A stretch of 63,742 bases of DNA from Amphiscolops sp. MND2022 (lineage: Eukaryota): NCBI GenBank assembly GCA_964187785.1, contig CAXLNC010001113.1, positions 124,001 to 187,742 of the forward strand, read 5' to 3'. The translations under genes were made by a program, and so were the position numbers. Under the pieces are notes generated by a model that was not told where the DNA came from, did no database searches, and was given only the letters and a program-made list of their open reading frames with translations. This document shows, one piece after another, positions 7,548 to 45,597 of the stretch. Every line of letters starts with the position of its first letter. Position 1 is the stretch's first letter.

Positions 7548-7585
7548 TGATGATGATGATGATGATGATGATCATGATCATGATC

Positions 7586-7623: not shown

Positions 7624-7626
<3 letters not shown>

Positions 7627-10094: not shown

Positions 10095-10411
10095 TGTCAA
10101 TGAATGCTCTCTCCTAAACCCCGGTTTTGCGTCATTGGGGTCGGGATACAGAGTGTTGAGCAGAGACATGACTGCTGACAGGCAGGTGAGGATCTGTCTG
10201 GTTTTGTTGCATGTGACCTTTACATGCATTCGCCCTCACAAGCCATTTAGGCTAAGTCTCGGTCAACAGACCGAGGAGAAGGGCGGTACAGATAGCCACA
10301 AGGAAGGTTAGCATCATCACCAGATTGATAGCAGCATCAACACGCCTATTGAGCCATATCCTAGATAGACAGTAGTGACATCCAGCCCTCTGCCTTTCCC
10401 TGTGTGGACTG
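10095..10411 (+). repeat. 5' terminal/LTR-like leader of copy B
   Basis: Homologous to 56307-56620 and 6075-6331; the upstream flanks are unrelated among the three copies. Confidence 0.65.
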
Positions 10412-13400
10412 ATGGCAGAAGGGTCTGGTCACCTTCCAAATCCCGCAATGGGCAGAGACCTCGTGGCTGGCCATATTCACAAAGACCGTTATGGTCGCAG
10501 CCCGGCACCAGCATCGAGCCATCGCCCTGTAGGGAGAAAAAGAGTCCAAGCATCAGCAGATAGATCTCCTAAGCGGGTAGAACCTCCAGAATTGCCCAGG
10601 TTGAGAGCCCTAGAGGCACAAGCAGCAGCAATCCCTATCTCTAGTTCCGCGGCATCCTCCACCTCTCCCAGAAGCGGATCTTCTCGTGTCAATCCATACC
10701 CAATTGGGGAGGCTACCGAGAGCTCACCCTTGAGATTGTGCCCTCTGTGGCTACCCAAGCTACCCAATCTTGGGAACAGGGAGGATCATTGGATTTGACC
10801 CCGATAAGGAACGAGACTAGCCCTACCACTCCTTCCAATAAAACCATACAGGTTATGAGCCCAAACCTGGGTCAGGGATTGGCATCAGGTTCGACTCAGG
10901 TTGAAGAGGGAGAGATAGAGATGGATACCGCAATGGCCAGAGCTATTCTTCAGTCATGGTCGGAGACAAGGGCTGAAGATGGAACAGTGCAGAGAACATA
11001 CACTCAGTGTGCTCGTGAATGGCCTCTGTCAGAAACGGATTGAAGCTGCACTAAATGTTCTGAAGCGTGCTTGTGAGTATCTCCATGAAGGCATGATGCA
11101 GATGGGAAAGACAGTTGAACAGAAGGCCAATATTCCCAGTGTGGAGGCCGCTGTCAGAGAACTTGCTCATCACACTCAAGAGGTCCGTAATGGAGTGCAA
11201 CGAACAGTGACTCGCCAGACTGAGTTCTCCAACAGGCTGGACAGCATGACAGAGCACAATCAGGAAGCTCGTGGTCGTATGGAGGCATTGTCAGCCCAGG
11301 GTGATCAAGGAGGACGAGAACACATGGCCCTCGCTGTGGAGTATAGGCACTCAATAGACGAGACTCAACGAAAGGTGATTCAGTTGGGGAGCCTTATGGA
11401 ACATTCCCAAGTGGACACTCAGAGACTCGACAAGGGTCTGACTGATCTACGAGAAAATGTCTTCAATAATAGTGTGGCTATTGATCACCTAAAGGAGGAC
11501 ACGCAGCGCGAAGTAGCGAAGCTGAGTACCCTGAGTGGTCAAGCAACAGACATGTCAGTCTATCAACGGCATGCTGCCAGTCACGATCAAGCGCTTACTC
11601 AGTGCCGTACTCAGCTGACAACTCAGGCGCAGCGACTCGATGAAAGTGAACAACACCTTCGGCGTCTCCAACAGGAAGTGGCAGGCTTGACGGGTGAGCC
11701 GACTCCTCGAGTGGAGCAGGGCATCCCGAATCGAGATCCAGAGTTGGCCATCCGCCTGTCACAGCTGGAGGAAGGATTGAAGACTCAGCAAAGGGCGATG
11801 AAGCAGCTCAAAAGGGACAATGCTGAAGACGCCAAGGAGGTGAAGCAGTACCTAGACCAGGTACATGACCTTCTCACTACGACCCTCGAGGCAGTTGGCT
11901 CTACAACCTCCGAGCGGGCTACAGGAGGGATGACGAGGTTGTCCAAGGTGGCCAAAAGAGGAGATTTTAGAGTTGACGTGGAAGACAGTGACTTCTGCAA
12001 GGTGGGAGAGATTGTCCTTATTGGGGGTCAGGAGGCGAGAACAGTCATGGGTAAGAGTAGCCTTATCTTCAAAGTGCCACTGGATGGGGAATATCCCGAA
12101 GGAACGACTGTGAGAACCCTGCGGGAGAATGAATTTCTTCAGCTGGACGGTGAGAATGTGTATGTCTATGCGCAGGATTCAGAGGGACAGAGTCATATGG
12201 TGTGTGGTGTGGACTTGATGCATCGAGCACCCCCTGAGTGGGCAGAAGAAAGGGATGATGTCCAGGACCAAGTCTATTCAGATGACCTGGATCAACGGGT
12301 CCAGAGGGCCGTAGACGCTAGAATGGCGACTCCGAGGCCAGTTGTCTCGGGAGCAGGAGGACCGATGGTACCACCATGGACAGCATCCCATGCCCATGAA
12401 TGGAGTGCCTCGAATGGCCAGACAAAAATTCCTGTGTTGCCTTCTTTTGGAAAGAAGGAGGAAGGTGAGCCAGCGCAGGAACAAGGAGCATCTTATCAAG
12501 GCTGTGTCAAGCAAGAGGAGGATGTTAAGTTCGAGTCCCTGGATGACTACTTCTGCAGAGGAATGGACTCATCAGGACCAGCTTCATGGGATAAAATCCT
12601 TCGAGAAATGGAGCAGAATTCCCTTGAAGACGTGGGCACCATGAATTATCGAGAAGGAGTACGAGAAGAGAAATGGGGAATGTTGGACTTGAAGAGTATA
12701 CAGTTCCCAAAGGTGACCGCTCAATCGGTCAAAAGGGCGACCTTACTGCAGTACTTTGAGGTGGACTTTATCCGAGCTATGGGTATTATCAGCCCTGCAG
12801 CGGCCACCTATGCCAAAGCAGTGATTGCTGGTGTCCACAGAGATCTTCCTGTCTATCGCAAGCGAGATATGAGCACGACTGTCCGCGACTGGACCGGGAA
12901 GATGGTTGAAGAACTGTGGCATACACGCGCTGAAGCAGCGGTGAACTTAGCTTTACAGACAGCAGGGGTATCAGCAGAATCCTTGGAGATGGCGCGAATG
13001 CTAAGGCATGACCCACCAGTGAGGTTGATATTGATGACGGCTTATCATCGGCTGCTGCCCTATCAGTCTAGAGAAGAGGAAGAATTGCAGCAATATGTGA
13101 GGGAACCCCAGGTGGGCGATCAAGGAGCAGTGTCTACTTTTCAGAAGCTTCAGGCATGGAAGAGTGCTGGTCGTCGCTTAAGGCAGATGGGAGGTATGCT
13201 GCCCGGTATTCCTGCCTTGATGACTGCCTTTGACAAGATTTTAGCGGCCTTCAACATTCACAATCAGAGAGGGAATTGGTTCTACCAGACGGAGAGGAAC
13301 CTTCTTCCCATGGTGGACGCGACTCCAGGCCAAGCTGCATTCTTCTTCCACACCGTCGAGGTCAACTTGAACCAGGTCACGACAATGGTGAGCTATCTCC

Positions 13401-13658
13401 CACCTTCTGCTGCGAAAATCCATGCTGTGGATGCAAAGCCCAAGGCAAAGCCTAAGCCAAGGGCAAAGGCTAATAGCTCAGGGGGGGGGAACATCTGCTC
13501 CCACGAGCCCACCGCCTTCCTCTCCAGTGAAGACGGAAGGTCCGATTCCAAAACCTAATGCCCAGGTGGCCGAAAAGGGAGGCTCACCCGGAAAAGGTAA
13601 GAGCAAGGGAGCGGGATCAAGCACTGATAGACCGCCAGTGAACAAGAAGGGCCAACAG
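10412..13658 (+). CDS. Gag-like protein with Ser/Pro-rich N-terminus, long coiled coil (~11100-11900) and conserved core; frameshifts near 10735, 11030 and 13485
   Basis: ORFs 10412..10798, 10738..11043 and 10979..13558 together match the single copy C ORF; position upstream of the zinc finger and protease. Confidence 0.75.
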
Positions 13659-13715
13659 TGCATTCGGTTCTACCGAGGAACTTGCTCACGAGGTGACCAA
13701 TGTCAGTATGGACAT
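13659..13715 (+). other. CCCH zinc finger (C-x7-C-x5-C-x3-H) at the nucleocapsid position
   Basis: CIRFYRGTCSRGDQCQYGH, conserved in all three copies. Confidence 0.85.
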
Positions 13716-13869
13716 ATTCTTGGGACAGATGGAAAGCCCTTGAAGATCGCTCCGGAATTGCTGGAAAGGTATGACCGGCATTCAGCAGCGAGACGGGAGG
13801 GCAAGAAGCCAGAGACGACCGTGACGGCACAGATGCTTATGCTGAACGCCATTGAGCAAGCCGACTCTT

Positions 13870-14190
13870 GTTGCTTCTGCCTGCTGGATACTGGCGCGAA
13901 TGCCTTGGTACTTCCTCGTAAGGGAGAGATGTCTGGTACTGAAGCTCATTGCACTGTCCCGGGTGGCACCATGGTTCCCGGAACAGTTGTCCAGACACTC
14001 CGGTATGGGGAGGATGACTATCACGTTGTGGCTATTGAGGGTGCGTCTCCACTGATGCCACTATCATGGCTGATCTTGTTGGCAGGATGGTCCTACATGC
14101 CAGTGGTGAAGGATGGGAAAATGGAGGTGACGATCGCATCCCCGAGGGGACTGTCTGTGACGCTTGTCGAGCGTTCAAAGATGCATTATA
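13870..14190 (+). CDS. Retropepsin-like aspartic protease domain
   Basis: CLLDTGANALV, with the catalytic DTG starting at 13887. Confidence 0.88.
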
Positions 14191-14399
14191 TCGACAAGGC
14201 CACCTTCTTCAATGTCCTTCAGGACGCTTGGAAGCGTTGTAAGGCCTCGGATGGCATGGACTATGACCAGCTCAAGAGAGCCCTGTCAATGGAGACGCCC
14301 CATGTGGCAAGTGCAGTGAAGATGGAGCGACCCTCCTCTATCCGTTTCTTGGACATGAACATGAGCCGCAAGGGCTATATGAGGAGGATTGTGGATCTC

Positions 14400-14870
14400 C
14401 AAAGAACAATCGAGTCTATGACTTGGCCAAGTCAGAACAATAGGCCAGGACATGGCCTCTTCTTGGGAGCACCAATAGGGGATATGAGAAAGGATGTGTT
14501 TCCAAGAAGACCTTTGACGCGCAGTATACGCAGATCTTGCGGAGGGTACGTGCGCTGGCCAGATGTTGCCAAAAGACAATCCAGTATATGGGCGTATATC
14601 TGACAAAGTTGGAGTCTGGTCAAGGACTTAATCAGCACAGGGACTTCCGCAACCACGAGAAGTATCTCAACTACACCATCAACTTCGGTCACTATACGGG
14701 TGGACACTTAGAGGTGCTTCGTGACGATGATTGGGAGTCCTGTGCGGCACCGTTGATCTGGGTTGAGTTCACGGCGGACATCATCAAGCATCGGGTAAGA
14801 GAGGTGACTTCAGGTGTGCGATATTCAGTGACCCTGTTTACTCCAAACCACCTGGAGAGGCTGTCCGATG
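14400..14870 (+). CDS. 2OG-Fe(II) dioxygenase domain (TET/JBP-like motif pattern)
   Basis: HRDFRN (14636), FGHYTGGHLEV, KHRV (His at 14789), RYSVTLF (14819); all conserved in copies A and C. Confidence 0.82.
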
Positions 14871-15169
14871 ATGAGGATGAATCTTGAATCGTTTGGTTTC
14901 CCAGTGGACCAGTATGCTGAAAGGAAGACCACCAGTGTCTCTGCCGTGAAAGGCCCCACCGTTGAAGAACTTGACACTTCCGGTGAGGTGGAGATTCCCT
15001 CGACAGCGAGGATTGAGGAGATCCTAGAGAACTCCGAAGAAGCGCTCACTGTCCAAGCGGTGGAGAAGCAAGTCAGAGCTCTATCAGATCCATTGGACTC
15101 CCTGAGTGGTCAGGTGCCACGACCAAGCGCATCTGAGAATCGATCTTCGCGGCTGACTTTGGAGACATG

Positions 15170-15620
15170 TGCCTTGATGACACGGGACTTCAATACCGCG
15201 ATGGGTCTGCCGAAGGGCGAACTTCCTCAGTGCGTGGGTCAAGACAGGGGTTCCGTATATGGACAAATGCTGCGTGAAGAAGTTCAAGAAGTGGAAGAGG
15301 CCGTAGCACGAGGCATTCTTCATGAAGTGCTGGCCGAGTCCGTTGATGTCCTTTACCTTGTGTTCAACTTGCTGCAGGAGTGCGGCCTTGAGAGAGCTGT
15401 TGATCCAGCCTTCTCGCTGAAGCACGAAGACAACATGAAGAAGCAGCATGAGACAGTGACGCACCTGGCTTGTACCAGGAACGCATATGCTCAGTCTACT
15501 GGGAAGTCTGAAAAGGAGTTGGCGTTCACTGTCTCCAGAACTGAAGGAGGTAAGTGGCTCTTGTACTCCCAGGGCAAGCTGATCAAGCCTCATGACTATG
15601 TCTCGAGTGACTTTGACTCC
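15170..15620 (+). CDS. All-alpha MazG/DR2231-like NTP pyrophosphatase (dUTPase-like) domain
   Basis: EEVQE-x15-ESVDVLY (ExxE..ExxD), KHEDNMKK, GKLIKPHDY. Confidence 0.78.
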
Positions 15621-15799
15621 GTTGTTAGGATGCTCGCAGATGAGGAGTCCGTGAATGGACAAGAGAATGCGCAGAAGGCTCACTCATCAGGACCTCACAC
15701 CACTCAGTATACTTTCGCAAGTGTGGGTGTCCAAGTGGCCGCTGCCTCCATTGACTCCTCGCAGCGCACCTCAGGTGGTGGACAAAATCACCATGGATG

Positions 15800-16260
15800 G
15801 CAACCAGCATTGATGACTTCTTTCATGTGGTTAGCCAACGTCACTGGTGAGTTCATCTACCAAATGGGTGAAGACATCACTACAGTCCCCAAGCGGGCCA
15901 GGCCACGGTTGGTGGATGACCCTTTGGGAATGATGGAACAGGCACTTGTTGATTTGCGAGTCGCATGGGGTATGCATGATAGCTCAGCCATGTTGAGACA
16001 TCTCACTGTGTTGACCTACTTTGCGGTCCAGATGACTACTAGTCTCCATCTACACCCTTACCTTTCATCGACTTTCCTGTGGATCCACGAGTGGCAAATG
16101 GGGAAGATCTATGAGGACTTTGCTCCAGCAGAGAGCGCCTGGGAGATGATGCAGAATCTTACTATGAAAGAGATCCGAAATGGCTATGTCCTTGTGAACA
16201 GCGATTCCAGGGTCTTGGGTGACGACATTCTGGAGGAGAAAGCAGATGTGGTGTTGACCA
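15800..16260 (+). CDS. Degenerate second MazG-like repeat lacking the acidic metal ligands
   Basis: EQALVDLRVA / LTYFAV / FLWIHEWQMGK / GYVLVNSDSRVLG parallel EEVQEVEEA / VLYLVF / FSLKHEDNMKK / GKWLLYSQGKLIK. Confidence 0.5.
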
Positions 16261-16403
16261 TACCTGTTGAGAATCTGCTCATGTTGGTCCCCTACAAGAC
16301 TCATCTGCCGTTTGTGGGTATGACAAGTATTGGACAGTCGCCCTTAGTGGCAGAGGACATGGCTCACAAGGCCAACTCCACGGAGTTGGTGTCCCCTTCT
16401 CTA

Positions 16404-16445
16404 TGACAAGTACGGGCCCTCCTTAGGTCTCCTGAGGAGGTGCCC
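16404..16445 (+). promoter_or_regulatory. Putative stop-codon readthrough signal: TGA-CAAGTA, 7-nt spacer, hairpin 16414-16445
   Basis: Upstream and downstream ORFs are in the same frame; an identical arrangement is present in copy C. Confidence 0.8.
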
Positions 16446-16454
16446 TTTGATGCA

Positions 16455-16583
16455 TGCGCAGTGTGCTTTCGCCCATGTGCCCTCTGTGGCCCGAAGCATT
16501 GCATGCTGTGTTACCGTCGAATTCACCCATGGTGTGCCACGTCCCCACATGACGATGCACATCCCATTGTGTGCAGATTTTGC
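16455..16583 (+). other. PHD-like zinc finger with an extra CxxC, N-terminal to the integrase
   Basis: CAVC..CALC..CMLC-x4-H-x2-C-x12-CRFC. Confidence 0.7.
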
Positions 16584-16899
16584 GCCTCTTCCCCTGGTGG
16601 ACGTACTCATTTTCAGGTGCACAATGTTCAGATGAGACAGCGCTTTGTGATCTCTGGGTGCGCTACAGCCATGCCTGAGGTGCTTGAAGAACCCGCCATC
16701 ACGGTGCACTCCTCCGACAAGGACATTGCCAGTGGAGATGAGCATCCCTCTGTGGAAGAGCTACCTGCTGCACGGTGCAATCCAGTTCCCTTAGTGGACC
16801 GAATGGTGTGCGTCCAGGCACATAGGTCAAGCCAGACTGCACCTTTTATAGTTCCGGATATTCACCGTGTTCTTGAAGGAACAGGCATGTTGGAGTGCC

Positions 16900-17750
16900 C
16901 AGACCACAAATTGGACCATGGTGTTCCGGATCCTAAATGTGACTATTGTAAAAGAGCTCTGGGTCCCTTATACAGACATTCGGCCCTGAAGGAGTCAAGG
17001 GAGATTCCGATCCTCACATTTGATTTCTCAGGACCGCACCCCTCCACAGTGCATCCTGCCAAGCAATTGATGGTTATTGTTTGGTGCCTGAGGGAGGTGC
17101 GACTGATTTGGGCAATGGGCGTAGAAAATAGAGATGATCCCCATGTGGTCGCCGGATTACAGGTTGCTCTTGATGATTTGTCCAGCTTAACCGGAGGTTG
17201 CCGAGCACCTGTCCTGCGTCTTCATTCCGACAAAGCAAAGGAGTTCCTTGCGACAAGTGTGCGAAAATTGTTGCGTTCTCATGGCACACGCCAGACCACC
17301 AATTCCGGGTACGATCCTGCCGCAAATGGCATAGCTGAGCGATGGGTAGGTATTATCAAGGTCCGTGCAACGGCACTGCTGGCAGAGCATCGACTTCCTC
17401 CGGACTATTGGACATATGCCTGCAAATGGGTTGCCTATGTGCACAACCATCGTGTTCTGAGCATTCAGCTTAATGCCAGTTATCCACTTTTTGGAGATGT
17501 GGTGGTCGTACATCGTTTCTTGAAGAAACCACCGAGCTTTGAGGATCGTGGGATCACTGGAGTTTGTTTAGGACGCAATCCGTTAGTTTCTGGAGGGGTG
17601 ACAGTGGGAACGGTCTCGGATGGCCTTTTTAATGTGATTGTCACTGCCAAGGTCCGAAAATTGGGGGAGCGTCGTCCTCAGCGATGGAAGCTTCATGTGC
17701 ATCCTACGGAGCCTCGAGCGGCCGCCTATGTGCGCAATGATGGGGAGATC
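16900..17750 (+). CDS. Integrase (HHCC plus DDE core)
   Basis: DHKLDHGVPDPKCDYC; TFDFSGP; LHSDKAKEF; NGIAERWVGIIK. Confidence 0.92.
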
Positions 17751-19181: not shown

Positions 19182-21101
19182 ATGCTGGCTGAACTACAAT
19201 CTTTTGCCAAACTGGATGTGTATGAGGCAGTTTCCCGTGCGGACGTAGGCCACCAAGAAATACTTCCTGGCAGGCTGGTTCTTGTGGTGAAACCCAATCC
19301 AGAGGGCGTGAAAGGGAAGAAGAAGGCAAGAATTGTGGTGTGTGGGAATTTCCAGACTATTCATCAGGATGAAATGACCTCTTCAAAGACTCCTTCGTAT
19401 CCTATGCTGAGAATGCTCTTGTCCTTAGCTTCATATCAAGGTTGGCCGATAGAGACGTGGGACGTATCAACAGCTTTCTTGTACGCCAGGTTGTATGGGG
19501 ATAGGGATACGGACCTTGATGGTCAATACATCTATATGAGGCCGCCAAAGGTCATTGAGAAGCTTGGTCTGTTACCGGAAGGGACGATATGGAAGTTGAA
19601 GAAGGCGCTTTATGGATTACGTACTTCACCGCTTGCTTGGGAAGTTGAGAGAGACAATACCCTTGCACAGCTCCAATGGGAAGTTGAAGAACGATGGTAT
19701 GGTTTGGTTCCTGCAAAAGGCAATCCCTGTCTATGGGCGATCGTTGAGCTTGATGCGGGAAATCATTGTGTGCCCGGTGTGGCCAGGCCATCTGCACAGA
19801 CTCTGAGAGCCGAAGAACCAGGGCAGCCGTCAATGGCCAAGAAGTATCGCACAATAGGAATTCAGACAGAAGGTCAGGAGAAACCTGTGAGGTTGCTAGG
19901 AGGACTGGTCATGTATGTGGATGACCTGTTGCTGGCAATGCCGGAATGGCACTTAAGACCTGTGGTGGATCTATTGTTAAAGAAGTATGTTATGAAGCAG
20001 TCGGGTGTTCTCCCTAGTGGGCCACAGAAACAGGATGTGCAGATTGGTTTCCTTGGATGTCGAATAACCAGAGACCAGTATGGTATCATTTTCTGTGACC
20101 AAGAAAAGTACATCCAACACTGCATGCATGAGAATGGGTTTGTTGGTGCAACGCAACAAGTGACGTTGAAGCCCTTTCACCGACCACCCGAAGTGGATGA
20201 GCGACTGCCTGAGGAAGTCTTGTCAGAAGAAACCAAAAGGAAGCATGTTGCAGAGTGCCAGAAGTACATAGGCCAACTGATGTGGCTGGCCACAAGGACA
20301 AGGCCAGACATCTCAGCTGTCCTAGGCATCTGCGCTTCCTTCATATTAAAGACTCCTCAGAAAGTGGCCAATCATTTAGTTGATTTGTGGAGATATGTGT
20401 GGACAACTCGTAGGTATGCAATGTCTACCCTTTCTCCCGCTATGGGCCCATCAAGTAGTTCTCCTCTTCCCGCAATGGGCTCGACAACAGGAGACCAACA
20501 TGGAAGCGATGTGGGTGAGAACATACGTCAAGATGGTTGCCTTGATGGCAGTGAAAGATTATCAATTGACAGACCGGAGTTTCACATCCATGCTTATACC
20601 GATGCCAGTTTTGCTACGTCAGGAGGGAGGAGTCGTTCGGGATTTCTTGTCTGTCTGGTTCAACCTGAAACGGGCGAGTATTCTGTTTTACAATGGTCCT
20701 CGAGGAGACAAACAATCACAGCGTATTCAGCGCCTGAGGCTGAGATAGTGGCAATGTCTGAGGGCATCATGACATCTATCTTGACGTATGATGCAGCAGA
20801 GTTTCTGGGTGTGTGTGTGGGTATAACTCCATTCTTGAAGATCCCAATGAAGACAGACAGTGACACTGGCCTGAAACAGTTAAAGAATCAGTCCATTGTC
20901 GTCAGGAATCGACCTCTCACCAAGAATTACAGCTATTTGCATGATGTGTGCTATGGGACACTGCTCCATCCCCCGTGCATTGAACCTTCATTTCTGCCGG
21001 GAAAGGTACAGAAGGCTGACGGAATGACCAAGATTTTGGGACGGAACCTTCAAATGGAGTTCATGGCCATGTTAGGTATGCGCTCCCCTTCTTACCTCTA
21101 A
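19182..21101 (+). CDS. Copia-type reverse transcriptase plus RNase H; preceded by a copy-specific TAG at 19170
   Basis: KARIVVCGNFQ, WDVSTAFLY, LKKALYGLRTSP, YVDD; RNase H AYTDASFA, WSSRRQ, SAPEAEIVAM, TDS, KADGMTK. Confidence 0.95.
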   Translation: MLAELQSFAKLDVYEAVSRADVGHQEILPGRLVLVVKPNPEGVKGKKKARIVVCGNFQTIHQDEMTSSKTPSYPMLRMLLSLASYQGWPIETWDVSTAFLYARLYGDRDTDLDGQYIYMRPPKVIEKLGLLPEGTIWKLKKALYGLRTSPLAWEVERDNTLAQLQWEVEERWYGLVPAKGNPCLWAIVELDAGNHCVPGVARPSAQTLRAEEPGQPSMAKKYRTIGIQTEGQEKPVRLLGGLVMYVDDLLLAMPEWHLRPVVDLLLKKYVMKQSGVLPSGPQKQDVQIGFLGCRITRDQYGIIFCDQEKYIQHCMHENGFVGATQQVTLKPFHRPPEVDERLPEEVLSEETKRKHVAECQKYIGQLMWLATRTRPDISAVLGICASFILKTPQKVANHLVDLWRYVWTTRRYAMSTLSPAMGPSSSSPLPAMGSTTGDQHGSDVGENIRQDGCLDGSERLSIDRPEFHIHAYTDASFATSGGRSRSGFLVCLVQPETGEYSVLQWSSRRQTITAYSAPEAEIVAMSEGIMTSILTYDAAEFLGVCVGITPFLKIPMKTDSDTGLKQLKNQSIVVRNRPLTKNYSYLHDVCYGTLLHPPCIEPSFLPGKVQKADGMTKILGRNLQMEFMAMLGMRSPSYL

Positions 21102-21279
21102 TGGTGTGTCTCGTCAATTACACGTAATGTGTCGCATGTTGTGCTAAGCTGTGTTTCCTTGGTGGACTGTGTTTGAGAGAATGACTGATGAGATTGAGGC
21201 TGTTCCCGTTATGGGCTAATATTTGTGTGTCTGTCTGGAGCCGTTTACAGGAAAGAGGATCAAGGGTGGCGGTGCGATT

Positions 21280-24200
21280 ATGTCCCACAGGGGGGAGGGA
21301 GCCATCTATCAGGAGGGCCAAGACCGGCCTTCCCAACCTGTTGCCTCTAGTCGGCAAAGGACAAGCACAGCTGGTGCAACTGAGATGGCCCCGAGTGGCA
21401 TTTCTACAGCATCATCCACGCAACCGTCACCACCTCTTCCAACCAGTGACCTACCTAAGGAAGTGCCGCATATGGCAGAAGGAAGGTCACAAATGACCGT
21501 AAAACTCGATCAAGCAGTAGATGCGCGACAATTAGCTGCGCATGATGTGGTACCACGGCTGAGAATACAGCTTGAGGAGATCTTTGAGCCTTCCCCTGTG
21601 GACCAGGTCGACTTATCTCAGACTGTCAATAGTCGAGTGATTATCATTCATGGCCCCACTGGAACAGGAAAATCGACAGTGATCCCATGGGAAGCTATGA
21701 GATGGCTGGAAGAACACTGTTCCCGCAGAGGACGCAAAGCTGGTAGGGTGATTTGTTCACAGCAGAGGAGGAAAGTTACCATCTCCTTGGCCCAGGAGGT
21801 CCGACGTAGACATGGCGAAGTTGGAGTCTCCACAGTGGGCTATCATGTGTCAAGAGACCGCCAAATCACGGATGACACTAGATTGGTTTATCTCACTGAG
21901 GCTATTGGTGTCTTCTCTCTGCTGAATAACAGATCGCCCGGTGTGGCCAATCCGCTAGCAATTGTGATAGCAGATGAAATCCATGAAAGGACCATGTACA
22001 CACAGATGATCATCGGCTTGGCTCGAGATCAGATGTCTCGTAGCACCGGAATGGTCTTGATCCTCATGTCTGCGACAGTTGATATGGAGGAATTGAGAGA
22101 TGCCCTTCCAGGAGCTCGGGAGATTGAAATTGGGAAGCATGAGTTCGCAGTGCACCGCTATTACCTCGAGAGGCCTGTGACTCAGTCTACCAATATTCTT
22201 GAGCAGACAGCACGACTAGTGGTGACCCTGCACCATCAGCATGGCACAACAGATCTGGTGGAGGGTGTCCCGAGCGGCCAATTCTGCGACCATTTCTTGG
22301 TATTTTGTCCAGGCAAGCCTCAGATGAGGGTTCTGGCTTCTATCTTGATAAGATGGCAGGAATTGGGATATACTCGGGGACTGGAAATTGTCCAAATGTC
22401 GAGTGGAGAGGACCCTCGGACCTGGGAGTACTTTGACAAAGCAGTGACAGACTATCCCGTAATGGGCCGTGATCGACCATACTACATGAGTCCTCATGGC
22501 ATCCAGAAAATGAAGCCAAACGCGGGCAAGAATGGTCCACAATATCCTCCCTATGCGGACAAGGACATCGTGACGCAATTATCCCATGTGGTCAAACGGA
22601 AAAGGAAGGTGGGGCTGACGACCAATGTCAACCAGACCGGAGCCACTCTGACTTCGGTTGCTGTGGTGATCTCGACGACAGGCGTCAGGACATGCTCCCC
22701 CAACTTGAGATCCAAAGAGGAGGTCAATTGCATCCAGACGGTGTCCGTGAGTGACCTGATTCAACAGGGAGGAAGGGCTGGACGTGTATGTCCCGGAGAA
22801 CATTATGTGATGGCTTCAGAATCCCAGGTGGTCGGACAGTTTCGAGGAGCAAGTGCACCAGAGCTGCTCAATGCCGATGTGGCACCGCTCATTAGCATTT
22901 GCAAGAGGATCAACATAGATCCACTCAACTTTCCGATCTTGAACATGCCGGATGAGAAGGTGTTGGGAGCCACCACACAGCGAATGAGAATGCTGGAGTT
23001 GCTAGACGATGACGGCAATCTCACCCATCTGGGACAATCACGACTGGTGTTGGACTATACCCCAGAGTGGGCCCGCTTTATTGCCAAGGCATTGGAGTAT
23101 GGAGTGTCGGAGGGAGCTATCCGAATTGCGGCGGTGCTATGCCGAGAAGAAGATCTATACACCCCACATGTTCGTGAATCTCTTTCCCATGTGGACGGTG
23201 ATGTGATGACAATCCTCCATTTGGTATGGTTGGCTGAAGGAATCTTGAAGAGGTTTCACATCACACGAGTCCAGGCACTATCCAACCATGATGCCGCAAA
23301 GGCAACCCTTGAGCGGGCAGGCCTACAAGTCAAAGGGGTGATGCAAGTCATGCAGAACATTGAGCAGCTGCGTGAGTCAATTGCAAACTCAGATCTCCCG
23401 CGTGGGCCCTTGAGGAGATCCTCGGACAAATGCTATGCGACCCTGCTGGTGCATGCTTTGTGGGAGGGGTTCTACATGAATGTGATGATCAAGAGCTTCA
23501 CTGGACAGTACGTGAGCCCTACCTATGGAGGCGAGTGGAGCATCAGCAAGACCACACTGCAATATGCACCCTTGGTGGTCCTCCCGTTGAAGAAGACGAT
23601 CATAGATGGGAACCCTTTCCTCCAGTGGATCACCCCATTGCCAGTTGAGTGGCTTGTCGAACGAGATTGGTGGATCCAGACACATTGGGAGGATAATGAC
23701 TGTCGCATGGTTTACCGCAATCTGGTCGCATGCCCGATATTGCGAGACATGGTGAGCACGGCAAGGCTGTACCCTGGTGGTCGAATCAAGATCATTGAGC
23801 TGAAGGCTATCCCACCAGTGGAAGAAAAGCCGCCAATGGCCGTGACCATCGATAATTGCGCAGTCATGTTGAATAGGTACCTCCTCACAGCCCGAGAGCT
23901 GGAAATCATCTTCGACTTGGTCTCGAGTGACTACTTGGTAACTGCATATGTGTCAGGCTCATATGTCTTGAACAACACGGTCAAGAATGAGGTCACAATG
24001 CAGGTTCTCAAGTGGACAGTGAGCACTTCCAAGTCCAAGAAGCCGTACAAACTGAACACCATTGACAAGCCATCTGTCCAGACACTTGGCGCTTACTCTT
24101 TCATTCCCCGTGAGGACTATCATCAGGAAGCCTGGTTGAGTGGTGGTAGAGAAGTGCAGCTTAAGTCCAATGCGGAAGACCTGGCCTTGTCGCGGATGTG

Positions 24201-27200
24201 GGGCTCCGTTGATGACACAGCCCTTGAAGAGACGAATATGTTCCAGACGGATGCCAGAGACTTGGCAGCAGACCGAGAAGCGGAGGAACATGAGGATAAC
24301 TTCGACTGCTATGGAGAAAAGGAAGTTTCCTCGATGGACAGCATCTTCAAGGAGAATGAGAAGCTCACCAAATGCCGCGAAGGGCACCAGGTCTACGGGT
24401 ATTGTGCTTGGTGCGACGCATCGATACTGAACCCGAATAAGCTTTGGAAGCATTATCTGGACTCACATCAGGTCCTGATGCAAGTGGCGCCTATGTCTCC
24501 TCCAAGCGTGTGGCAGACCCTGATGGGAAGAGAGATGGGAGCGAGAACACCTCAGTTCCAGACACCGCAGGGTCAGTACAAGTACTGGGTACAACCAGCA
24601 AAGAGGGATGGCATTGATACTTTTGTTATTGGGACTACCCAAAGGGGAAACGAGACCCTGGTATCTCTTGGAGAATTGTTTTTGGCAGACAACGGTGCTC
24701 TGCCCTTGGTGGCCACGAGCCCTGCAACACAGGTGCTCTCTCCAAGACAAAAGCCCCCTAATTGCGTGAGGGTTGCCCTGGGTGGCACTGATTACTGGAG
24801 CAAGGTAAAGCTGTATGATATGAATACGCTCCTCTCAATTGGGACCCCAGTCACATCGGACATGGCATTCTTGACGATGTTCAGCGAGTGGGGAGATATC
24901 CAGGGTGGTAAACAGGCTGGAAGAGGAGAGTACAGTTCAGAGGAACTGTATGGCATTCGTCGCTATCCCGACCAACTGAGAATGATGTCTCAAGAGGTGG
25001 AAGATGTGATGAAGTCCCGTGTGGCACCTCTAGATGTTCTCAGGGTTCGAGTGCCACATTGCTCTATGCCGGCCCCAGAGGTGTTGCAGGCGAGAATTAC
25101 ACCAGCCTACCACGAGGATAAAGGGGAAGCAAGGGGGTTCCTTCGTTGTGCCATAGCGGCTAGGCAGCAGAAGGGATATTCGGACTGTTCCACATGCCCC
25201 GAGCGGCAAATCTTCGATCACTTGTGGTTGGATGATTCGGAGTATGTGGCAGAGAGCACACTCCCTTCAAACCCCTTTGCGGGCCAGTGGACTTACGCTG
25301 ACAGCACAGAAGGCGAGAAGTGGAGATGGCTCACCCATGTAGACGTCTGGAGCGTTGCTCAAGAAATTCAGAGAAAAGGGGTGAAGTCAGAACTCAACTA
25401 CCACGAAATGGCAAAGCGGGACAGTGTGAGAAGGGTATGGCCAGTTAGTTTGGTGAGACATCCAGTCCCCAATGAGGCGTCTTCCAATGCCGTGAAGAAG
25501 GTATTGGATCAGTATCCCTGGGTGGACTCCGGCTTGCAGTGGAAAGGCACTATGGTCTTCAAGGAGAGCCCTGGTGAAGACAGGTCAACTCTTTTCGATA
25601 CCACCAAGAAGCCTGGAGTCAAACCCCTGAGCGGGCCTCCCAGTTCTAGCCAGGATGCTTCGTCACTTTCTGCTCCTCCAGCAAAGGCAATGCCTAGTGC
25701 TTTGACAAAGGCTGACACGCCTGCTGGAAAGGCAACTAGTTCAGGGAGGCCAGCAAGTGAGCCCGATATCAAAGACAAGGGAGATGGGACCGCAGGACCC
25801 AAGCCATCTACTCCCTTGAGGGCCGCTTCAGAGTCAGGAATTACTGATCCAACCAAGAAGGAGGATACGTCTGCTGGTCCAAAGGCCGCCTCAACGACAG
25901 TGAGTATGCCGACATCTTCTCCGAAACCCTCGTCCTCAGTGGCATCTATGCACACAGCATCAAGCGCCATGCCAAAGGAAAAGGCTTCATCTGAAGCAAC
26001 TCCGATGTCAGCACCTCCAGCCAAACCCAAGGCAGGACCGGAGACAGGAGGTCTGTCGACCTCGAGAGCCCCGAGTGGTGCAGCAAGCCAGTCGTCTGTG
26101 ACTGCAGGATCCGGTTACCCGACCATTGCAGAGTCGTTGGGACAGAAAAAGGGTCCACCGTTGAAGGCAGCTCCATCCTCGAAGACAACGACAGCGCCTT
26201 CTACCAAGTCAGAAGATACTGGTCATGCTGCCGCGAAAGGCTCTACTTTGGTACCTCCCAAGGATAAGGCTGAACCATCAAATCCACCATCTTCAACGGC
26301 TTCAGTCTCGCAGGTGAAGGAGCCAGCTCAGCCAGCAAGGGCTCCTCGAGCCCCTGCAGTACAACCACCTGTTGAAAAGGATGCCGCGATGTCCTACACT
26401 GAGCAGGTCATGAAGCAGGCTGCCTCAGCAGTTCCCACAGGCAAGCTCACGGATGAGGACTTTGAGAGGATGGCTCAGGAAAGGTGGCAGAGGATACTGG
26501 CTGAATCAACTACCTGTGTCTCAGGCAAGGCTGCGTCTGTTGCTCAACTTCCTCAAGAACTACGAGGCGAGATTCTGCCACCTCAACCATTGTTCTCACC
26601 GATCCGCGGATGGATAGACGGTCTGACACCACCAGTTCACAAGGAAGGTCGAACAATTGAGCTCTCTTTGCCCGGTGTGGTCGGTCTCTTCAAGTGGACA
26701 TTCTTGGCCGAAAGCAGGCACGCAAAGAGACCCGCCCGTACAAGGGTGGAGAGACCAGGCCCTGAGCAGCTAGGCATGGATGCGCTCATCATGATAGTTG
26801 ACCGTTCCACTGGAGATCGCATTCCCTGGAATACCGGTGTGAAGAAAGAGCTGGAAAGAGGCGCATATGCGGCGAGCTATGATCGCGAGAATCCAATGCC
26901 TGGAGACAAGAAGATCATCTTGCACATGCAGCCTATCTCTTACCTGAGCGATGCGAACAAGATTGCATGGATACGAGCATTCTTGGCATGGGCTTACAAG
27001 GCTGTGTTGATCCAAGATGTGAATCCCCAGGTGGGCATGTCCGTTCACACCGGAATGGTGCATTTTCTGAATGAAATGTACTCCCGAGTGAGCGTGAAAG
27101 GAGCCAAGCCACTATCAGAGGTTGGCCAAGGGATTCCGGTTTATGCATCTGGACAGGAGATTCGGACCGGTCGAGAGGGATTGATGACCTCGGATTGGGG

Positions 27201-27463
27201 TAATCCACTCTTCATAGCGGCAGGCCGGAAGATTGTGGACTCCCTTTTCACAGGAGCAAGCTCGAAGAAGGAATCAGACTTGGGTGACAGAATGGAGTCT
27301 GCCTTCAATCTCAGCTTCTGGGAAAAGGAGGGAGCTTTCGACTGGTCTTGGCTCGGTTTGGATCTCGTGAATGAGCGCATGACTGAGGAGCTGTTGGTGT
27401 CCCTTGAGTGGAGTTGTTATCGAGAGTCGGAGATCCAGTTGATACAGACGTTCCTGGACATCT
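21280..27463 (+). CDS. Intronless DEAH/RHA (HrpA-like) SF2 helicase ORF2, >2000 aa, C-terminus truncated
   Basis: GPTGTGKST (21652), DEIHER (21973), MSAT, FCPGK, TTNVNQTG, QQGGRAGR (22762), HA2-like LTHLGQ..LDYTPEWARFI; C2H2-like CAWC..H..H (~24400); low-complexity linker ~25600-26450. Confidence 0.9.
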
Positions 27464-27817
27464 ATAAAGTCCACCTCAAAGTACTGCAGTAAGGTCGCCC
27501 TTTTGACCGATTGAGCGGTCACCTTTGGGAACTGTATTTCTTCAAGTCCAACATTCCCCATTTCTCTTCTCGTACTCCCTCTCGATAATTCATGGTACCC
27601 ACGTCTTCAAGGGAGTTCTGCTCCATTTCTCGAAGGATTTTATCCCATGAAGCTGGTCCTGATGAGTCCATTCCTCTGCAGAAGTAGTCATCCAGGGACT
27701 CGAACTTAACATCCTCCTCTTGCTTGACACAGCCTTGATAAGATGCTCCTTGTTCCTGCGTTGGCTCACCTTCCTCCTTCTTTCCAAAAGAAGGCAACAC
27801 AGGAACTTTTGTCTGGC
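27464..27817 (-). mobile_element. Inverted near-identical duplicate of copy B gag segment 12417-12771
   Basis: The reverse complement matches 12417-12771 with only a few differences. Confidence 0.9.
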
Positions 27818-45414: not shown

Positions 45415-45597
45415 GGTTACACAACCACCCTTGAACCTCTTCTCCTGCAAACGGCTTCAGACAGACACACACACCTCAGCCCATAACGGGAACAACTCAC
45501 ACATTATCAGACTCTCTTCTCATCACTCTTTGTCCACCAAGGGAACACAGCACAGCACGACATGAGACACATTACGTGTAATTGATGAGACACATCA

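What the first reader, a model, noticed from the sequence alone, without database searches (positions are those of the whole stretch)
10095..27463. Giant copia-type retroelement family carrying an enzyme cargo suite: 2OG dioxygenase, MazG-like NTPase, PHD finger and DEAH helicase
Seen: three independently located copies with unrelated upstream flanks share one terminus and one domain order: Gag, CCCH, PR, 2OG, MazG(x2), TGA, PHD, IN, RT, RH, then (in B and C) an intronless DEAH helicase, totalling >=17.4 kb with the 3' end still missing. Catalytic motifs survive even in the diverged copy A, and B/C differences look mostly synonymous by eye. Established: the PR-IN-RT-RH order defines Ty1/copia, which are usually a few kb with only Gag and Pol. 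Inference: this is a self-contained retroelement that brings its own nucleic-acid modification, nucleotide-sanitising, chromatin-reading and RNA-unwinding functions. I know of no described copia with this combination, but cannot search to confirm.
Basis: partly seen in the sequence, partly recalled or inferred. Interest (0 to 1): 0.95.

Follow-up and report, generated by a model that had tools for sequence, protein, structure and literature searches.

The report
Giant enzyme-carrying copia retrotransposon of dinoflagellates
The window holds three damaged copies of a real, roughly 22-kb Ty1/copia retrotransposon family, probably from a dinoflagellate, whose polyproteins also carry a 2OG dioxygenase, a MazG-type nucleotide pyrophosphatase and a 3,300-residue DEAH-helicase protein, all kept by selection; I found no published description of this combination.

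Summary
Copy B (10095-27463, +), copy C (56620-41281, -) and copy A (6331-1, -) share one 5' terminus (TGTCAATG) with unrelated upstream flanks. They share the order Gag, CCCH, PR, 2OG, MazG, UGA, PHD-like finger, IN, RT, RH, then a DEAH helicase ORF.

An almost intact relative in ENA assembly ERZ25074608 supplies the missing end. It is 22.1 kb long, with two about 785-nt LTRs (98.7% identical) and a polypurine tract. It has three ORFs of 2046, 1548 and 3319 aa.

dN/dS between B and C is 0.02-0.20 in every domain, cargo included, and above 1 in the wrong frames.

New findings:
- ORF1 and ORF2 are joined by a conserved UGA-C plus spacer plus hairpin with compensatory changes, which indicates programmed readthrough.
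- An invariant 23-mer after the LTR is the likely primer-binding site.
- The LTRs carry a relic dinoflagellate spliced leader, exact in a sister family.
- The 2OG domain recurs in annotated Symbiodinium copia proteins, and a sister family carries thymidylate kinase in place of MazG.
- The 2OG model (pLDDT 91) lies nearest AlkB/ALKBH5/TET.

A second MazG domain is not confirmed, the PHD call is weak, and cargo functions are inferred. All three window copies are defective.

The parts
10095..10846 (+). Copy B 5' LTR (starts TGTCAATG; the 3' edge is uncertain by about 10 nt). The Gag start codon (ATGGCAGA, 10412) lies inside it.
   Evidence: Shared terminus. Matches the 3' LTR of L004 and the 5' LTR of L001.
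10235..10256 (+). Conserved LTR motif resembling a relic dinoflagellate spliced leader (DinoRL tandem).
   Evidence: It is the most conserved LTR block between lineages. The three LTR sites are the best matches in the whole window to the relic-SL probe. An exact DinoRL sits at the same LTR position in sister family L007/L008.
10848..10870 (+). Invariant 23-mer directly after the LTR: putative primer-binding site, lying inside the Gag reading frame.
   Evidence: Identical in A, B, C, L001, L002 and L005. One mismatch in L007, and the 17-nt core is kept in L006.
10412..13555 (+). Gag region of B (long coiled coil), broken by copy-specific frameshifts near 10729-11039 and near 13430.
   Evidence: C has one 1090-codon frame here. 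omega 0.09.
13659..13715 (+). CCCH zinc finger, in the nucleocapsid position.
   Evidence: Pfam zf-CCCH/Torus hits below cut-off; motif located.
13800..14250 (+). Aspartic protease (DTGA at 13887-13898).
   Evidence: Motif located and conserved in all copies. omega 0.08.
14300..14884 (+). 2OG-Fe(II) dioxygenase domain (HRD 14636, H 14789, RYS 14819). In B it is interrupted by frameshifts near 14471, 14599 and 14875.
   Evidence: AlphaFold model pLDDT 91; fold neighbours. omega 0.06.
15150..15650 (+). MazG/PRA-PH-type all-alpha NTP pyrophosphatase domain (EEVQEVEE 15276, AESVD 15333).
   Evidence: Pfam PF01503, 33.5 bits against a cut-off of 21.3. PHROG nucleotide pyrophosphohydrolase, E 7e-10. 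omega 0.15.
15651..16403 (+).
   Evidence: No family hit. omega 0.10. Model unusable, pLDDT 36.
16404..16445 (+). Readthrough cassette: in-frame UGA-C (16404-16407), 7-nt spacer, 14-bp bulged hairpin (16414-16445).
   Evidence: Same position in B, C, L001 and L005. Compensatory pairs. A different hairpin sits at the same place in L007.
16455..16583 (+). Cys-rich C4HC3 (PHD-like) finger at the N-terminus of ORF2.
   Evidence: Spacing. Pfam PHD E 3.2e-4 only in the A-type lineage. omega 0.20.
17019..17342 (+). Integrase catalytic core (D, D35E).
   Evidence: Pfam rve; motifs. omega 0.02.
19170..19172 (+). B-specific nonsense codon (TAG where C has TGG).
19263..21098 (+). Copia-type reverse transcriptase (YVDD 19914) and RNase H (from about 20500). 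The ORF2 stop is at 21099-21101.
   Evidence: Pfam RVT_2, E 8e-19. Tree. omega 0.04 and 0.16.
21280..27463 (+). ORF3, truncated at about 62% of its length. It has a DEAH/RHA helicase core (about 21650-23300), then a conserved region of unknown function and a Pro/Ser/Ala-rich linker.
   Evidence: omega 0.07 for the core and 0.10 for the middle.
27464..27817 (-). Inverted 355-nt copy of B's own gag (12417-12771, 98% identity) at the breakpoint that removes B's 3' end.
41281..56620 (-). Copy C: LTR 56620 to about 55870, PBS 55866-55844, UGA 50276-50274. Homology to B ends at 41281 inside ORF3. It has many frameshifts.
1..6331 (-). Copy A (a diverged subfamily, about 60% nt identity to B and C): LTR 6331 to about 5556, PBS 5553-5531, Gag, then a 1041-codon open frame (3125-3) with CCCH-PR-2OG-MazG. 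It runs off the window.

Best explanation
This is an autonomous, unusually large Ty1/copia LTR retrotransposon family, most probably of a dinoflagellate. Full length is about 22 kb.

Layout: LTR (about 750-790 nt, with the Gag start codon inside it); primer-binding site inside gag; ORF1 = Gag, CCCH finger, protease, 2OG dioxygenase, MazG-type NTP pyrophosphatase; a leaky UGA with a downstream hairpin; ORF2 = PHD-like finger, integrase, reverse transcriptase, RNase H; ORF3 = a roughly 3,300-residue protein that opens with a DEAH/RHA RNA helicase; polypurine tract; LTR.

Shown:
- the anatomy;
- that the extra domains are inside the LTR-bounded unit and in frame;
- that they are under purifying selection;
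- that the UGA-plus-hairpin cassette is conserved with compensatory changes across families.

Inferred:
- ORF1 is made in Gag amounts, and a small fraction of ribosomes read through UGA to add IN-RT-RH.
- The cargo forms a genome-maintenance kit for reverse-transcribing a roughly 21-kb RNA. The helicase would unwind or remodel the long template, as retroviruses do with borrowed host DHX9. The MazG domain (thymidylate kinase in a sister family) would clean or supply the dNTP pool, as retroviral dUTPases do. The 2OG dioxygenase would act on nucleic acid, either AlkB-like repair of the RNA/cDNA or TET/JBP-like base hydroxylation.
- The genomic RNA is trans-spliced with the dinoflagellate spliced leader, whose relic sits about 120-140 nt into the LTR.

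The three window copies are dead: they carry frameshifts, one nonsense codon and truncations.
For: - Full-length relative: LTR pair L005:3589-4369 and L003:20099-20888, 98.7% identical. GAGGGGGAG lies directly before the 3' LTR in two lineages. ORFs of 2046, 1548 and 3319 aa.
- The same architecture occurs in L001, L004 and L002, and in sister families L007/L008 (2397 + 1611 + 3525 aa) and L006.
- omega is 0.02-0.20 in the true frame and above 1 in the others.
- The gag/pol frame switches fall at different places in each copy, and intact copies have one frame, so they are mutations.
- UGA-C plus a 7-8-nt spacer plus a hairpin is found in B, C, L001, L005, L002 and L007. There are 5 pairs with double changes, and fold energies are -21 to -29 kcal/mol.
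- The putative PBS 23-mer is invariant in six copies, and its core is kept in two other families.
- Helicase: Prp43/DHX15 E 2e-29 over RecA1, RecA2, winged helix and ratchet; motifs.
- MazG: Pfam above cut-off and a PHROG hit.
- 2OG: HxD...H is at least 90% conserved in 23 relatives. Model pLDDT 91. The top PDB neighbours are ALKBH5, AlkB, CcTet and NgTET1.
- The 2OG domain also sits in distant copia polyproteins and in named Symbiodinium copia proteins.
- In the RT tree, the cargo families form a clade (99/98) inside a Symbiodinium-containing copia clade.
- Relic spliced leader in the LTRs (DinoSL sequence from PMC12014239).
Against: - No copy in the window is intact, and none has a 3' LTR.
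- No target-site duplication could be recognised in the one full-length relative.
- All close relatives come from one unnamed low-coverage ENA assembly, so some frameshifts may be read errors, and the host is inferred rather than named.
- No biochemical function is shown for any cargo domain.
- The 2OG domain scores best in Pfam with the prolyl-hydroxylase-like family and by sequence with PKHD hydroxylases in PDB. Foldseek TM-scores are only 0.45-0.61, so a protein substrate is not excluded.
- The roughly 2,650-residue ORF3 tail and the 750-nt 'second MazG' region have no assignable fold.
- The tRNA identity of the PBS rests on my memory of tRNA-Met anticodon arms. No tRNA gene was available to test it.
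- How ORF3 is expressed is unknown.
Confidence: 0.82

Rival explanations
1. The 2OG domain is a TET/JBP-type thymine hydroxylase that writes 5-hydroxymethyluracil, the characteristic dinoflagellate base, onto the element's own cDNA. MazG or thymidylate kinase would tune the pyrimidine pool. Together they would form a retroelement-encoded DNA-modification pathway, which differs from simple repair or sanitation.
For: - The highest TM-scores of the model are to CcTet (0.61) and NgTET1 (0.60), and to a phage JBP1/TET oxygenase (0.61).
- The motif is H-R-D, as in the dinoflagellate 5hmU synthase CryTJ1. That enzyme prefers single-stranded naked DNA, and 5hmU is enriched on repeats (PMC11572971).
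- The domain is found in copia elements across Symbiodinium and this host.
- A sister family carries thymidylate kinase.
Against: - Pfam Tet_JBP is hit by only 2 of 53 family members, at E 0.005.
- The PDB profile search gives NgTet E 0.7 against PKHD hydroxylase 9e-4.
- AlkB and ALKBH5 have better Foldseek E-values.
- 5hmU is reported as a silencing mark for transposons (PMC11572971), so self-marking seems counter-productive.
Confidence: 0.22
2. The 2OG domain is a protein hydroxylase of the prolyl or aspartyl hydroxylase kind. It would modify Gag, another element protein or a host factor, not nucleic acid.
For: - The best Pfam family is 2OG-FeII_Oxy_3 (21 of 53 members), and two members hit Asp_Arg_Hydrox.
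- The best PDB sequence matches are PKHD-type hydroxylases.
- Several viral prolyl-4-hydroxylase-like models appear among the BFVD neighbours.
Against: The first 46 PDB fold neighbours are almost all AlkB, ALKBH5 or TET structures, and the PKHD hydroxylase appears only at rank 47. All Pfam scores are below the curated cut-off.
Confidence: 0.15
3. The extra domains are passengers or artefacts: host genes next to insertions, a segmental duplication, or an assembly chimera. In that case they are not functional parts of the element.
For: B ends in an odd inverted duplication of its own gag. The source assemblies have low coverage (contig names).
Against: - The same order is seen in at least eight independent copies on different contigs and in three families.
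- The cargo is in frame with Gag-PR.
- ORF3 is followed by the polypurine tract and the 3' LTR in two lineages.
- The upstream flanks diverge exactly at the LTR start.
- omega is far below 1.
Confidence: 0.02
4. ORF3 is an envelope-like or otherwise virion-surface gene, making this an endogenous retrovirus-like agent and not an intracellular retrotransposon.
For: ORF3 occupies the position of env, downstream of pol. A conserved splice-acceptor-like block lies about 35 nt before its start codon.
Against: No hydrophobic segment reaches a transmembrane-like score in its 3,319 residues. The N-terminal 660 residues are a DEAH/RHA helicase.
Confidence: 0.03

Closest known systems
Ty1/copia (Pseudoviridae) LTR retrotransposons, including SmTCL1-4 of Symbiodinium microadriaticum (PMC5776459), Ty1, copia and Tca2
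   Same: - LTRs, PR-IN-RT-RH order, an RVT_2-type RT and a polypurine tract.
- Nearest named RTs are Symbiodinium copia proteins.
- From my own knowledge, not tested here: the Gag start inside the LTR and the PBS inside gag resemble Ty1; a PBS complementary to the tRNA-Met anticodon arm resembles Drosophila copia; a UGA between gag and pol with a downstream structure resembles Candida Tca2.
   Different: - Two to four times longer (22 kb against 5-10 kb), with about 6,900-7,500 coding residues.
- Protease sits upstream of the readthrough stop together with Gag.
- A CCCH finger replaces the CCHC knuckle.
- Extra 2OG, MazG or thymidylate kinase, PHD-like and DEAH helicase modules.
- A relic spliced leader in the LTR.
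Burro/GYPSM1 giant gypsy-like LTR retrotransposons of planarians, and other giant retroelements (PMC6431247)
   Same: The internal region exceeds 20 kb. They have very long polyproteins with many accessory domains, including a nucleotide-pool enzyme (dUTPase) between PR and RT.
   Different: Burro is Ty3/gypsy-like (RT before IN) and has an env-like region and apoptosis/ubiquitin-related domains. The element here is copia-type with nucleic-acid and nucleotide enzymes. The review (2019) lists no copia-type giant.
SymbioLINE-Dnmt and SymbioDIRS-Dnmt3 of Symbiodinium (PMC5890265)
   Same: They are dinoflagellate retrotransposons that have taken up a nucleic-acid-modifying enzyme into their coding region and kept it conserved in many copies.
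   Different: Those are LINE and DIRS elements carrying cytosine methyltransferases. That paper states that Symbiodinium copia elements lack a DNMT and reports no other cargo in them.
Retroviral and retrotransposon dUTPases (reviewed by Hizi and Herzig 2015, as cited in PMC6431247)
   Same: A nucleotide pyrophosphatase is encoded within the gag-pro-pol polyprotein and is thought to keep wrong nucleotides out of the cDNA.
   Different: Those are trimeric beta-barrel dUTPases (Pfam PF00692). The domain here is an all-alpha MazG/PRA-PH-type enzyme of unknown substrate.
AlkB domains in plant RNA-virus replicase polyproteins, and TET/JBP genes carried by fungal DNA transposons (PMC12730594)
   Same: A small 2OG-Fe(II) nucleic-acid dioxygenase is embedded in, or carried by, a selfish replicon. 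The viral AlkB domains are among the fold neighbours.
   Different: Those occur in RNA viruses or DNA transposons, not LTR retroelements. Sequence similarity to either class is marginal.
Cellular DEAH/RHA helicases (Prp43/DHX15, DHX9, DHX36, HrpA)
   Same: All core motifs are present, and RecA1, RecA2, winged helix and ratchet align at 25-30% identity.
   Different: It is encoded by a retroelement, no OB-fold domain is detected, and it is followed by about 2,650 conserved residues with no recognisable relatives.

Membership tests
Ty1/copia LTR retrotransposon | Two direct long terminal repeats bounding the coding region | tested here: met
   Full-length relative: 790 nt aligned at 98.7% (L005:3589-4369 with L003:20099-20888). 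In the window only the 5' LTRs are present.
Ty1/copia LTR retrotransposon | Domain order PR-IN-RT-RH (integrase before RT) | tested here: met
   Pfam and motif positions in B, L005 and L008.
Ty1/copia LTR retrotransposon | RT of the copia type | tested here: met
   PF07727 RVT_2, 68.6 bits against a cut-off of 31.6. The tree places it inside a copia clade with Symbiodinium copia.
Ty1/copia LTR retrotransposon | Primer-binding site after the 5' LTR and polypurine tract before the 3' LTR | tested here: inconclusive
   The PPT GAGGGGGAG abuts the 3' LTR in two lineages. An invariant 23-mer follows the 5' LTR, but the cognate tRNA could not be checked.
Ty1/copia LTR retrotransposon | Short target-site duplication | tested here: inconclusive
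   No matching flanks were recognised in the single full-length copy. The window copies lack 3' ends.
Ty1/copia LTR retrotransposon | Gag with a CCHC zinc knuckle | tested here: not met
   A CCCH finger stands in that place. This is a variation, not a bar to membership, because RT, order and LTRs define the group.
Programmed stop-codon readthrough (MLV / Tca2 type) | Single in-frame stop between the two ORFs, conserved in position, with a stimulatory RNA structure about 8 nt downstream | tested here: met
   UGA-C in B, C, L001, L005, L002 and L007. Hairpin with compensatory changes and a different hairpin in L007. ORF1 and ORF2 are in the same frame in intact L005 and L008.
Programmed stop-codon readthrough (MLV / Tca2 type) | Measured readthrough | not testable with these tools
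   Needs a reporter assay or ribosome profiling.
2OG-Fe(II) dioxygenase superfamily | HxD...H iron triad, 2OG-binding Arg, double-stranded beta-helix fold | tested here: met
   H95, D97 and H146 are at least 90% conserved in 23 relatives. AlphaFold model pLDDT 91, beta-rich. 296 PDB fold matches at E<=1e-3, the 50 listed all 2OG oxygenases. Pfam scores are just below cut-off (25.5-26.3 against 27).
TET/JBP dioxygenases | Match to the Tet_JBP profile; TET-like fold elaborations | tested here: inconclusive
   2 of 53 members hit PF12851, at E 0.005. NgTet E 0.7 by profile. These give the highest TM-scores (0.60-0.61) but not the best E-values.
AlkB-type repair dioxygenases | Match to AlkB profiles and fold | tested here: inconclusive
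   Best Foldseek E-values are ALKBH5 at 3e-7 and AlkB at 3.4e-7, with TM 0.47-0.52. No AlkB-family Pfam hit among the listed families.
MazG / all-alpha NTP pyrophosphatase | Profile match above cut-off and an EExxE...ExxD metal motif | tested here: met
   PF01503, 33.5 bits (B), 28.4 (L005) and 21.7 (A) against 21.3. Motifs. PHROG 671, E 7e-10.
   No profile or PDB hit for 15651-16403. The structure model is unusable.
DEAH/RHA RNA helicase | Motifs I, II (DEIH), III and VI, plus RecA1, RecA2, winged helix and ratchet | tested here: met
   Motifs. Prp43 E 2.2e-29, aligned to chain residue 622. DHX15 aligned over 306-601.
DEAH/RHA RNA helicase | C-terminal OB-fold domain | tested here: not met
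   No PF07717 hit, although nearly all cellular relatives have one.
PHD finger | C4HC3 spacing and profile match | tested here: inconclusive
   The spacing fits. PF00628 E 3.2e-4, 21.1 bits against 24, in L005 only; no hit in B, L001 or L007.

The most novel reading that the evidence does not exclude
A clade of dinoflagellate copia retroelements encodes its own DNA-base modification and nucleotide-pool pathway. The parts would be a TET/JBP-like thymine hydroxylase plus MazG pyrophosphatase or thymidylate kinase, as in hypermodifying phages. The element would then deliver cDNA already carrying the host's 5-hydroxymethyluracil. The spliced leader, copied into the LTR, would serve as part of the R repeat for strand transfer. 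This would be the first retroelement known to write an exotic base, and a possible evolutionary source or sink of the dinoflagellate 5hmU machinery.
Probability: 0.2. Interest if true: 0.95.

Novelty: new variant of a known kind. Interest (0 to 1): 0.8.

Why it matters
LTR retrotransposons are textbook minimal replicons of Gag plus Pol, 5-10 kb long. Here a copia lineage has grown to 22 kb and about 7,000 codons by adding a helicase, a nucleotide pyrophosphatase or kinase, and a nucleic-acid-type dioxygenase, all kept under selection.

- This parallels the way the largest RNA viruses acquired helicase and proofreading functions, and it gives a testable case for what limits retroelement size.
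- The 2OG domain turns out to be a general, unannotated part of dinoflagellate copia polyproteins, including those in published Symbiodinium genomes. Copia is reported as the most abundant retrotransposon class there (PMC5890265), so it bears on genome expansion and possibly on 5hmU biology (PMC11572971).
- The relic spliced leader inside the LTRs links SL trans-splicing to retroelement replication.
- The UGA-hairpin cassette is a compact readthrough signal that can be tested directly.

Tried and rejected
- Programmed gag-pol frameshift: rejected. The frame switch lies at a different residue in A, B, C and L001, and L005, L002 and L008 have one continuous ORF1.
- 3' LTR or solo LTR in the window: none found.
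- Target-site duplication in L005/L003: not recognisable.
- tRNA genes to test the PBS: none in the window or loci.
- Rfam: no family in the window.
- Host genes in the flanks: nine flank ORFs gave no credible Pfam hit.
- PDB by sequence for the ORF1 region, the MazG region and the ORF3 tail: only the CCCH finger and the helicase core match.
- NCBIfam added only coiled-coil and transposase noise.
- AlphaFold of the MazG region with a 13-sequence alignment gave pLDDT 36 and was not used.
- JGI metagenome scan with the 2OG domain: no relatives.
- The ORF1/ORF2 junction of L006 is too degraded to read.
- My first impression from memory that the HRD...N and RxS motifs mark a TET/JBP enzyme was not borne out by the profile searches. 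It is kept only as a rival.
- A search for the ENA accession in the literature found nothing.

Full report
**1. What is in the window**

A self-comparison shows one long repeat family present three times.
- Copy B is 10095-27463 on the plus strand.
- Copy C is 56620-41281 on the minus strand. It is 80.4% identical to B over 15.5 kb.
- Copy A is 6331-1 on the minus strand. It is about 60% identical to both and runs off the window.

All three begin with the same TGTCAATG, and the DNA upstream of that point is unrelated in each case. This is a mobile-element boundary, not a segmental duplication.

No second copy of the terminal sequence lies in the window. B is cut at 27463/27464 by an inverted 355-nt piece of its own gag, 98% identical to 12417-12771. 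C loses homology at 41281.

**2. Domains**

Pfam and motif searches confirm the stated order.
- Gag is about 1,000 residues and rich in coiled coil.
- A CCCH finger lies at 13659-13715.
- The protease motif DTGA is at 13887.
- A 2OG-Fe(II) oxygenase has HRD at 14636, H at 14789 and RYS at 14819.
- A MazG/PRA-PH pyrophosphatase scores above Pfam's cut-off, with EEVQEVEE at 15276.
- An in-frame TGA is at 16404.
- A Cys-rich C4HC3 finger lies at 16455-16583.
- The integrase D,D35E residues span 17019-17342.
- The copia-type RT (RVT_2, E 8e-19) has YVDD at 19914 and is followed by RNase H.
- A separate ORF begins with a DEAH helicase: GPTGTGKS, DEIHE, SAT, QQGGRAGR.

The helicase aligns with Prp43/DHX15 over RecA1, RecA2, winged helix and ratchet at E 2e-29. 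Its nearest cellular relatives are DHX9, DHX36, YTHDC2 and HrpA, at 25-30% identity.

- Only one MazG domain is detectable. The second half (15651-16403) is conserved and helical but matches nothing.
- The PHD call gets a sub-threshold Pfam hit (E 3.2e-4) only in the A-type lineage.

**3. The whole element**

The closest database relatives of the cargo ORF and of ORF3 all come from one ENA assembly, ERZ25074608.

Contig ctg177702 carries an almost intact copy (loci L005 and L003).
- A 790-nt direct repeat, 98.7% identical, brackets the element (L005:3589-4369 and L003:20099-20888). The length is 22,127 bp.
- ORF1 is 2046 aa: Gag, CCCH, PR, 2OG and MazG in one frame.
- ORF2 is 1548 aa: finger, IN, RT, RH.
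- ORF3 is 3319 aa.

ORF3 ends 139 nt before the 3' LTR. The purine run GAGGGGGAG abuts that LTR there and also in a B-type copy, L004. The helicase ORF is therefore inside the LTR-bounded unit.

ORF1 starts inside the 5' LTR. I could not find a target-site duplication.

The gag-to-pol frame switches seen in A, B, C and L001 lie at different residues, whereas L005, L002 and L008 are continuous. They are copy-specific mutations or read errors, not a programmed frameshift. B also has a private nonsense codon, TAG at 19170 where C has TGG, and frameshifts around the 2OG domain. All three window copies are dead.

**4. Selection**

I built codon alignments of B against C in two ways, guided by tblastn and from a plain nucleotide alignment. 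Both give dN/dS far below 1 everywhere.

| Region | omega |
|---|---|
| Gag | 0.09 |
| PR | 0.08 |
| 2OG | 0.06 |
| MazG | 0.15 |
| ORF1 C-terminal region | 0.10 |
| Finger | 0.20 |
| IN | 0.02 |
| RT | 0.04 |
| RH | 0.16 |
| Helicase core | 0.07 |
| ORF3 middle | 0.10 |

The same columns read in the two wrong frames give omega of 1.2-3.7, apart from one wrong-frame value of 0.52 in the short ORF3 N-terminal stretch.

ORF3 is conserved along its whole length between the two subfamilies, at 47% and 39% amino-acid identity. It has no transmembrane-like segment.

**5. Expression signals (new)**

- Readthrough cassette. ORF1 and ORF2 are in the same frame, separated by a single UGA followed by C. 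After a 7-nt spacer comes a bulged hairpin of about 14 bp. The arrangement is identical in position in B, C, L001, L005 and L002, and five pairs keep pairing through changes on both sides. In a third family (L007; RT 49% identical) the same place holds UGA-C, an 8-nt spacer and a hairpin of unrelated sequence. This is the signature of programmed stop-codon readthrough. It places protease, 2OG and MazG on the abundant Gag product, and IN-RT-RH on the rare readthrough product.
- Putative primer-binding site. A 23-mer directly after the LTR is invariant in all six copies of this family. It has one mismatch in L007, and its first 17 nt are kept in L006. Its reverse complement reads like a tRNA-Met anticodon arm. 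That is from my memory only, and no tRNA gene was available to test it.
- ORF3. It has a conserved start (MSHRGEG; B 21280) about 175 nt after the ORF2 stop. A conserved block ending in TTTRCAGG precedes it and looks like a splice acceptor. How ORF3 is expressed is unknown.

**6. Host and the spliced leader (new)**

The nearest named RTs are Symbiodinium copia proteins, at 24-29% identity. In an RT tree the cargo-bearing families form a clade (99/98 support) inside a clade that contains the Symbiodinium sequences. That clade is well separated from fungal and plant copia.

The most conserved block of the LTR, about 140 nt from its start, resembles a relic dinoflagellate spliced leader. The three LTR sites are the best matches in the whole window to the relic-tandem probe, with scores of 26, 25 and 24. 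The maxima of 20 shuffles ranged from 19 to 24.

In family 3 the relic is exact. CCATTTTGGCTCAAG lies about 110-120 nt inside the LTR in two independent copies whose upstream flanks differ (L007:2288-2302 and L008:2296). The DinoSL and DinoRL sequences come from PMC12014239.

I take this as good evidence that the host is a dinoflagellate. It also suggests that the element's RNA is SL trans-spliced and the leader is copied back into the LTR.

**7. How general is the cargo**

An exhaustive profile-free search of 1.84 billion representative proteins with the 2OG domain found only 224 relatives. Seven of the 53 relatives examined also contain an integrase domain, two of them with a copia RT as well.

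An HMM of the domain also hits named Symbiodinium proteins annotated merely as 'TY1B', 'Copia protein' or 'RE1' (P0198, E 5.5e-19, and others). The 2OG domain is therefore an old and widespread part of dinoflagellate copia polyproteins.

| Family | Loci | Layout |
|---|---|---|
| 1 (window; A-type and B-type) | L001, L002, L003/L005, L004 | Gag-CCCH-PR-2OG-MazG / finger-IN-RT-RH / helicase ORF |
| 2 | L006 | Gag-PR-2OG, then thymidylate kinase (E 6e-28)-IN-RT-RH-helicase, without MazG |
| 3 | L007, L008 | Same layout as the window family; ORFs of 2397, 1611 and 3525 aa |

**8. What kind of 2OG enzyme**

By sequence the domain is closest to the prolyl-hydroxylase-like Pfam family. Its closest PDB sequences are PKHD hydroxylases. 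All scores are marginal.

An AlphaFold model built on 23 diverse relatives is confident (pLDDT 91, pTM 0.87). Its PDB neighbours are led by ALKBH5, E. coli AlkB, Coprinopsis TET and Naegleria TET1. E-values are 3e-7 to 2e-6 and TM-scores 0.47-0.61, highest for the TETs. The PKHD hydroxylase appears only at rank 47.

Among viral models, AlkB domains of plant-virus replicases and a phage JBP1/TET oxygenase are prominent. A nucleic-acid substrate is therefore the better-supported reading, at about two in three. The choice between AlkB-like repair and TET/JBP-like hydroxylation is open.

**9. Interpretation**

The best-supported account is an autonomous giant copia element whose cargo helps it copy a roughly 21-kb RNA.
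- The helicase would handle the template.
- A dNTP-pool enzyme would do the job of retroviral dUTPases.
- The dioxygenase would act on RNA or DNA.
- Dosage would be set by UGA readthrough.

Only the anatomy, the selection and the conserved signals are shown. The functions are inferred.

The most interesting alternative is that the dioxygenase writes 5hmU on the cDNA. Dinoflagellate 5hmU is made by a TET/JBP homologue with an HRD motif that prefers single-stranded naked DNA and marks repeats (PMC11572971).

**10. Novelty**

Full-text searches found no copia or other LTR element described with 2OG, MazG, thymidylate kinase or a DEAH helicase.

The nearest precedents are:
- Burro giant gypsy elements, which carry a dUTPase (PMC6431247);
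- DNMT-carrying LINE and DIRS elements of Symbiodinium (PMC5890265), a paper that notes copia as the most abundant class but without cargo;
- roughly 10-kb SmTCL copia elements (PMC5776459).

This is a new variant of a known kind and would surprise specialists in transposable elements.

Limits of the evidence: one unnamed low-coverage source assembly, no intact copy in the window, no TSD, and no biochemistry.

Noticed in passing
window 10235-10256 (+), 56488-56467 (-), about 6215 (-); L007:2288-2302; L008:2296-2310: A relic dinoflagellate spliced leader lies about 110-140 nt inside the LTR. It is exact (CCATTTTGGCTCAAG) in family 3 and degenerate in the window family. This suggests the genomic RNA is SL trans-spliced and that the leader may form the start of the R repeat.
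   Followed up: partly
window 21225-21265 (+); L005 about 14775-14815: A conserved block (AGCCGTTTRCAGG...TCAAGGG) lies about 35 nt upstream of the ORF3 start codon, in an otherwise diverged spacer. It looks like a 3' splice or trans-splice acceptor for a separate ORF3 mRNA.
   Followed up: partly
window 27464-27817: An inverted 355-nt duplicate of B's own gag (98% to 12417-12771, but only 82% to C) sits at the point where B is truncated. It could be a local fold-back rearrangement or an assembly chimera.
   Followed up: partly
window 9100-9336 and 36371-36609: A 237-nt inverted repeat pair (95% identity), unrelated to the copia family, brackets copy B and the following 9 kb. It may be the ends or fragments of another repeat family.
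   Followed up: no
L006 (ctg173773_6x_l of ERZ25074608) 10001-17881: A sister copia family has one 2626-aa protein with thymidylate kinase (E 6e-28), IN, RT, RH and the start of a DEAD/DEAH helicase. A 2OG domain lies upstream, and there is no MazG.
   Followed up: partly
L008 (ctg177277_6x_l) 2738-24836: An intact copy of family 3 has ORFs of 2397, 1611 and 3525 aa, about 7,500 codons in all, which is larger than the window family.
   Followed up: partly
proteins P0198, P0211, P0228, P0230, P0254, P0204 (Symbiodinium spp., NCBI/UniRef): Published Symbiodinium proteins annotated only as TY1B-NL2, RE1, Copia protein or TY5A contain the same 2OG dioxygenase domain next to a copia RT. The domain appears to be unannotated in those records.
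   Followed up: partly
window 17751-19169 (+): An unusually long linker (about 470-600 residues) lies between the integrase core and RT. It is conserved (omega 0.15) and has no recognisable domain.
   Followed up: no
window 7507-7659, 29303-29663, 32081-32170, 37164-37343, 39792-39947, 62245-63459: The inter-element DNA is rich in microsatellites and short tandem repeats: GAT runs, CT-rich tracts, a 10-nt CTCGCTCTTC-like unit at two sites, and ACACG/AC arrays. No protein-coding host gene was detected in the flanks.
   Followed up: partly
   Followed up: no
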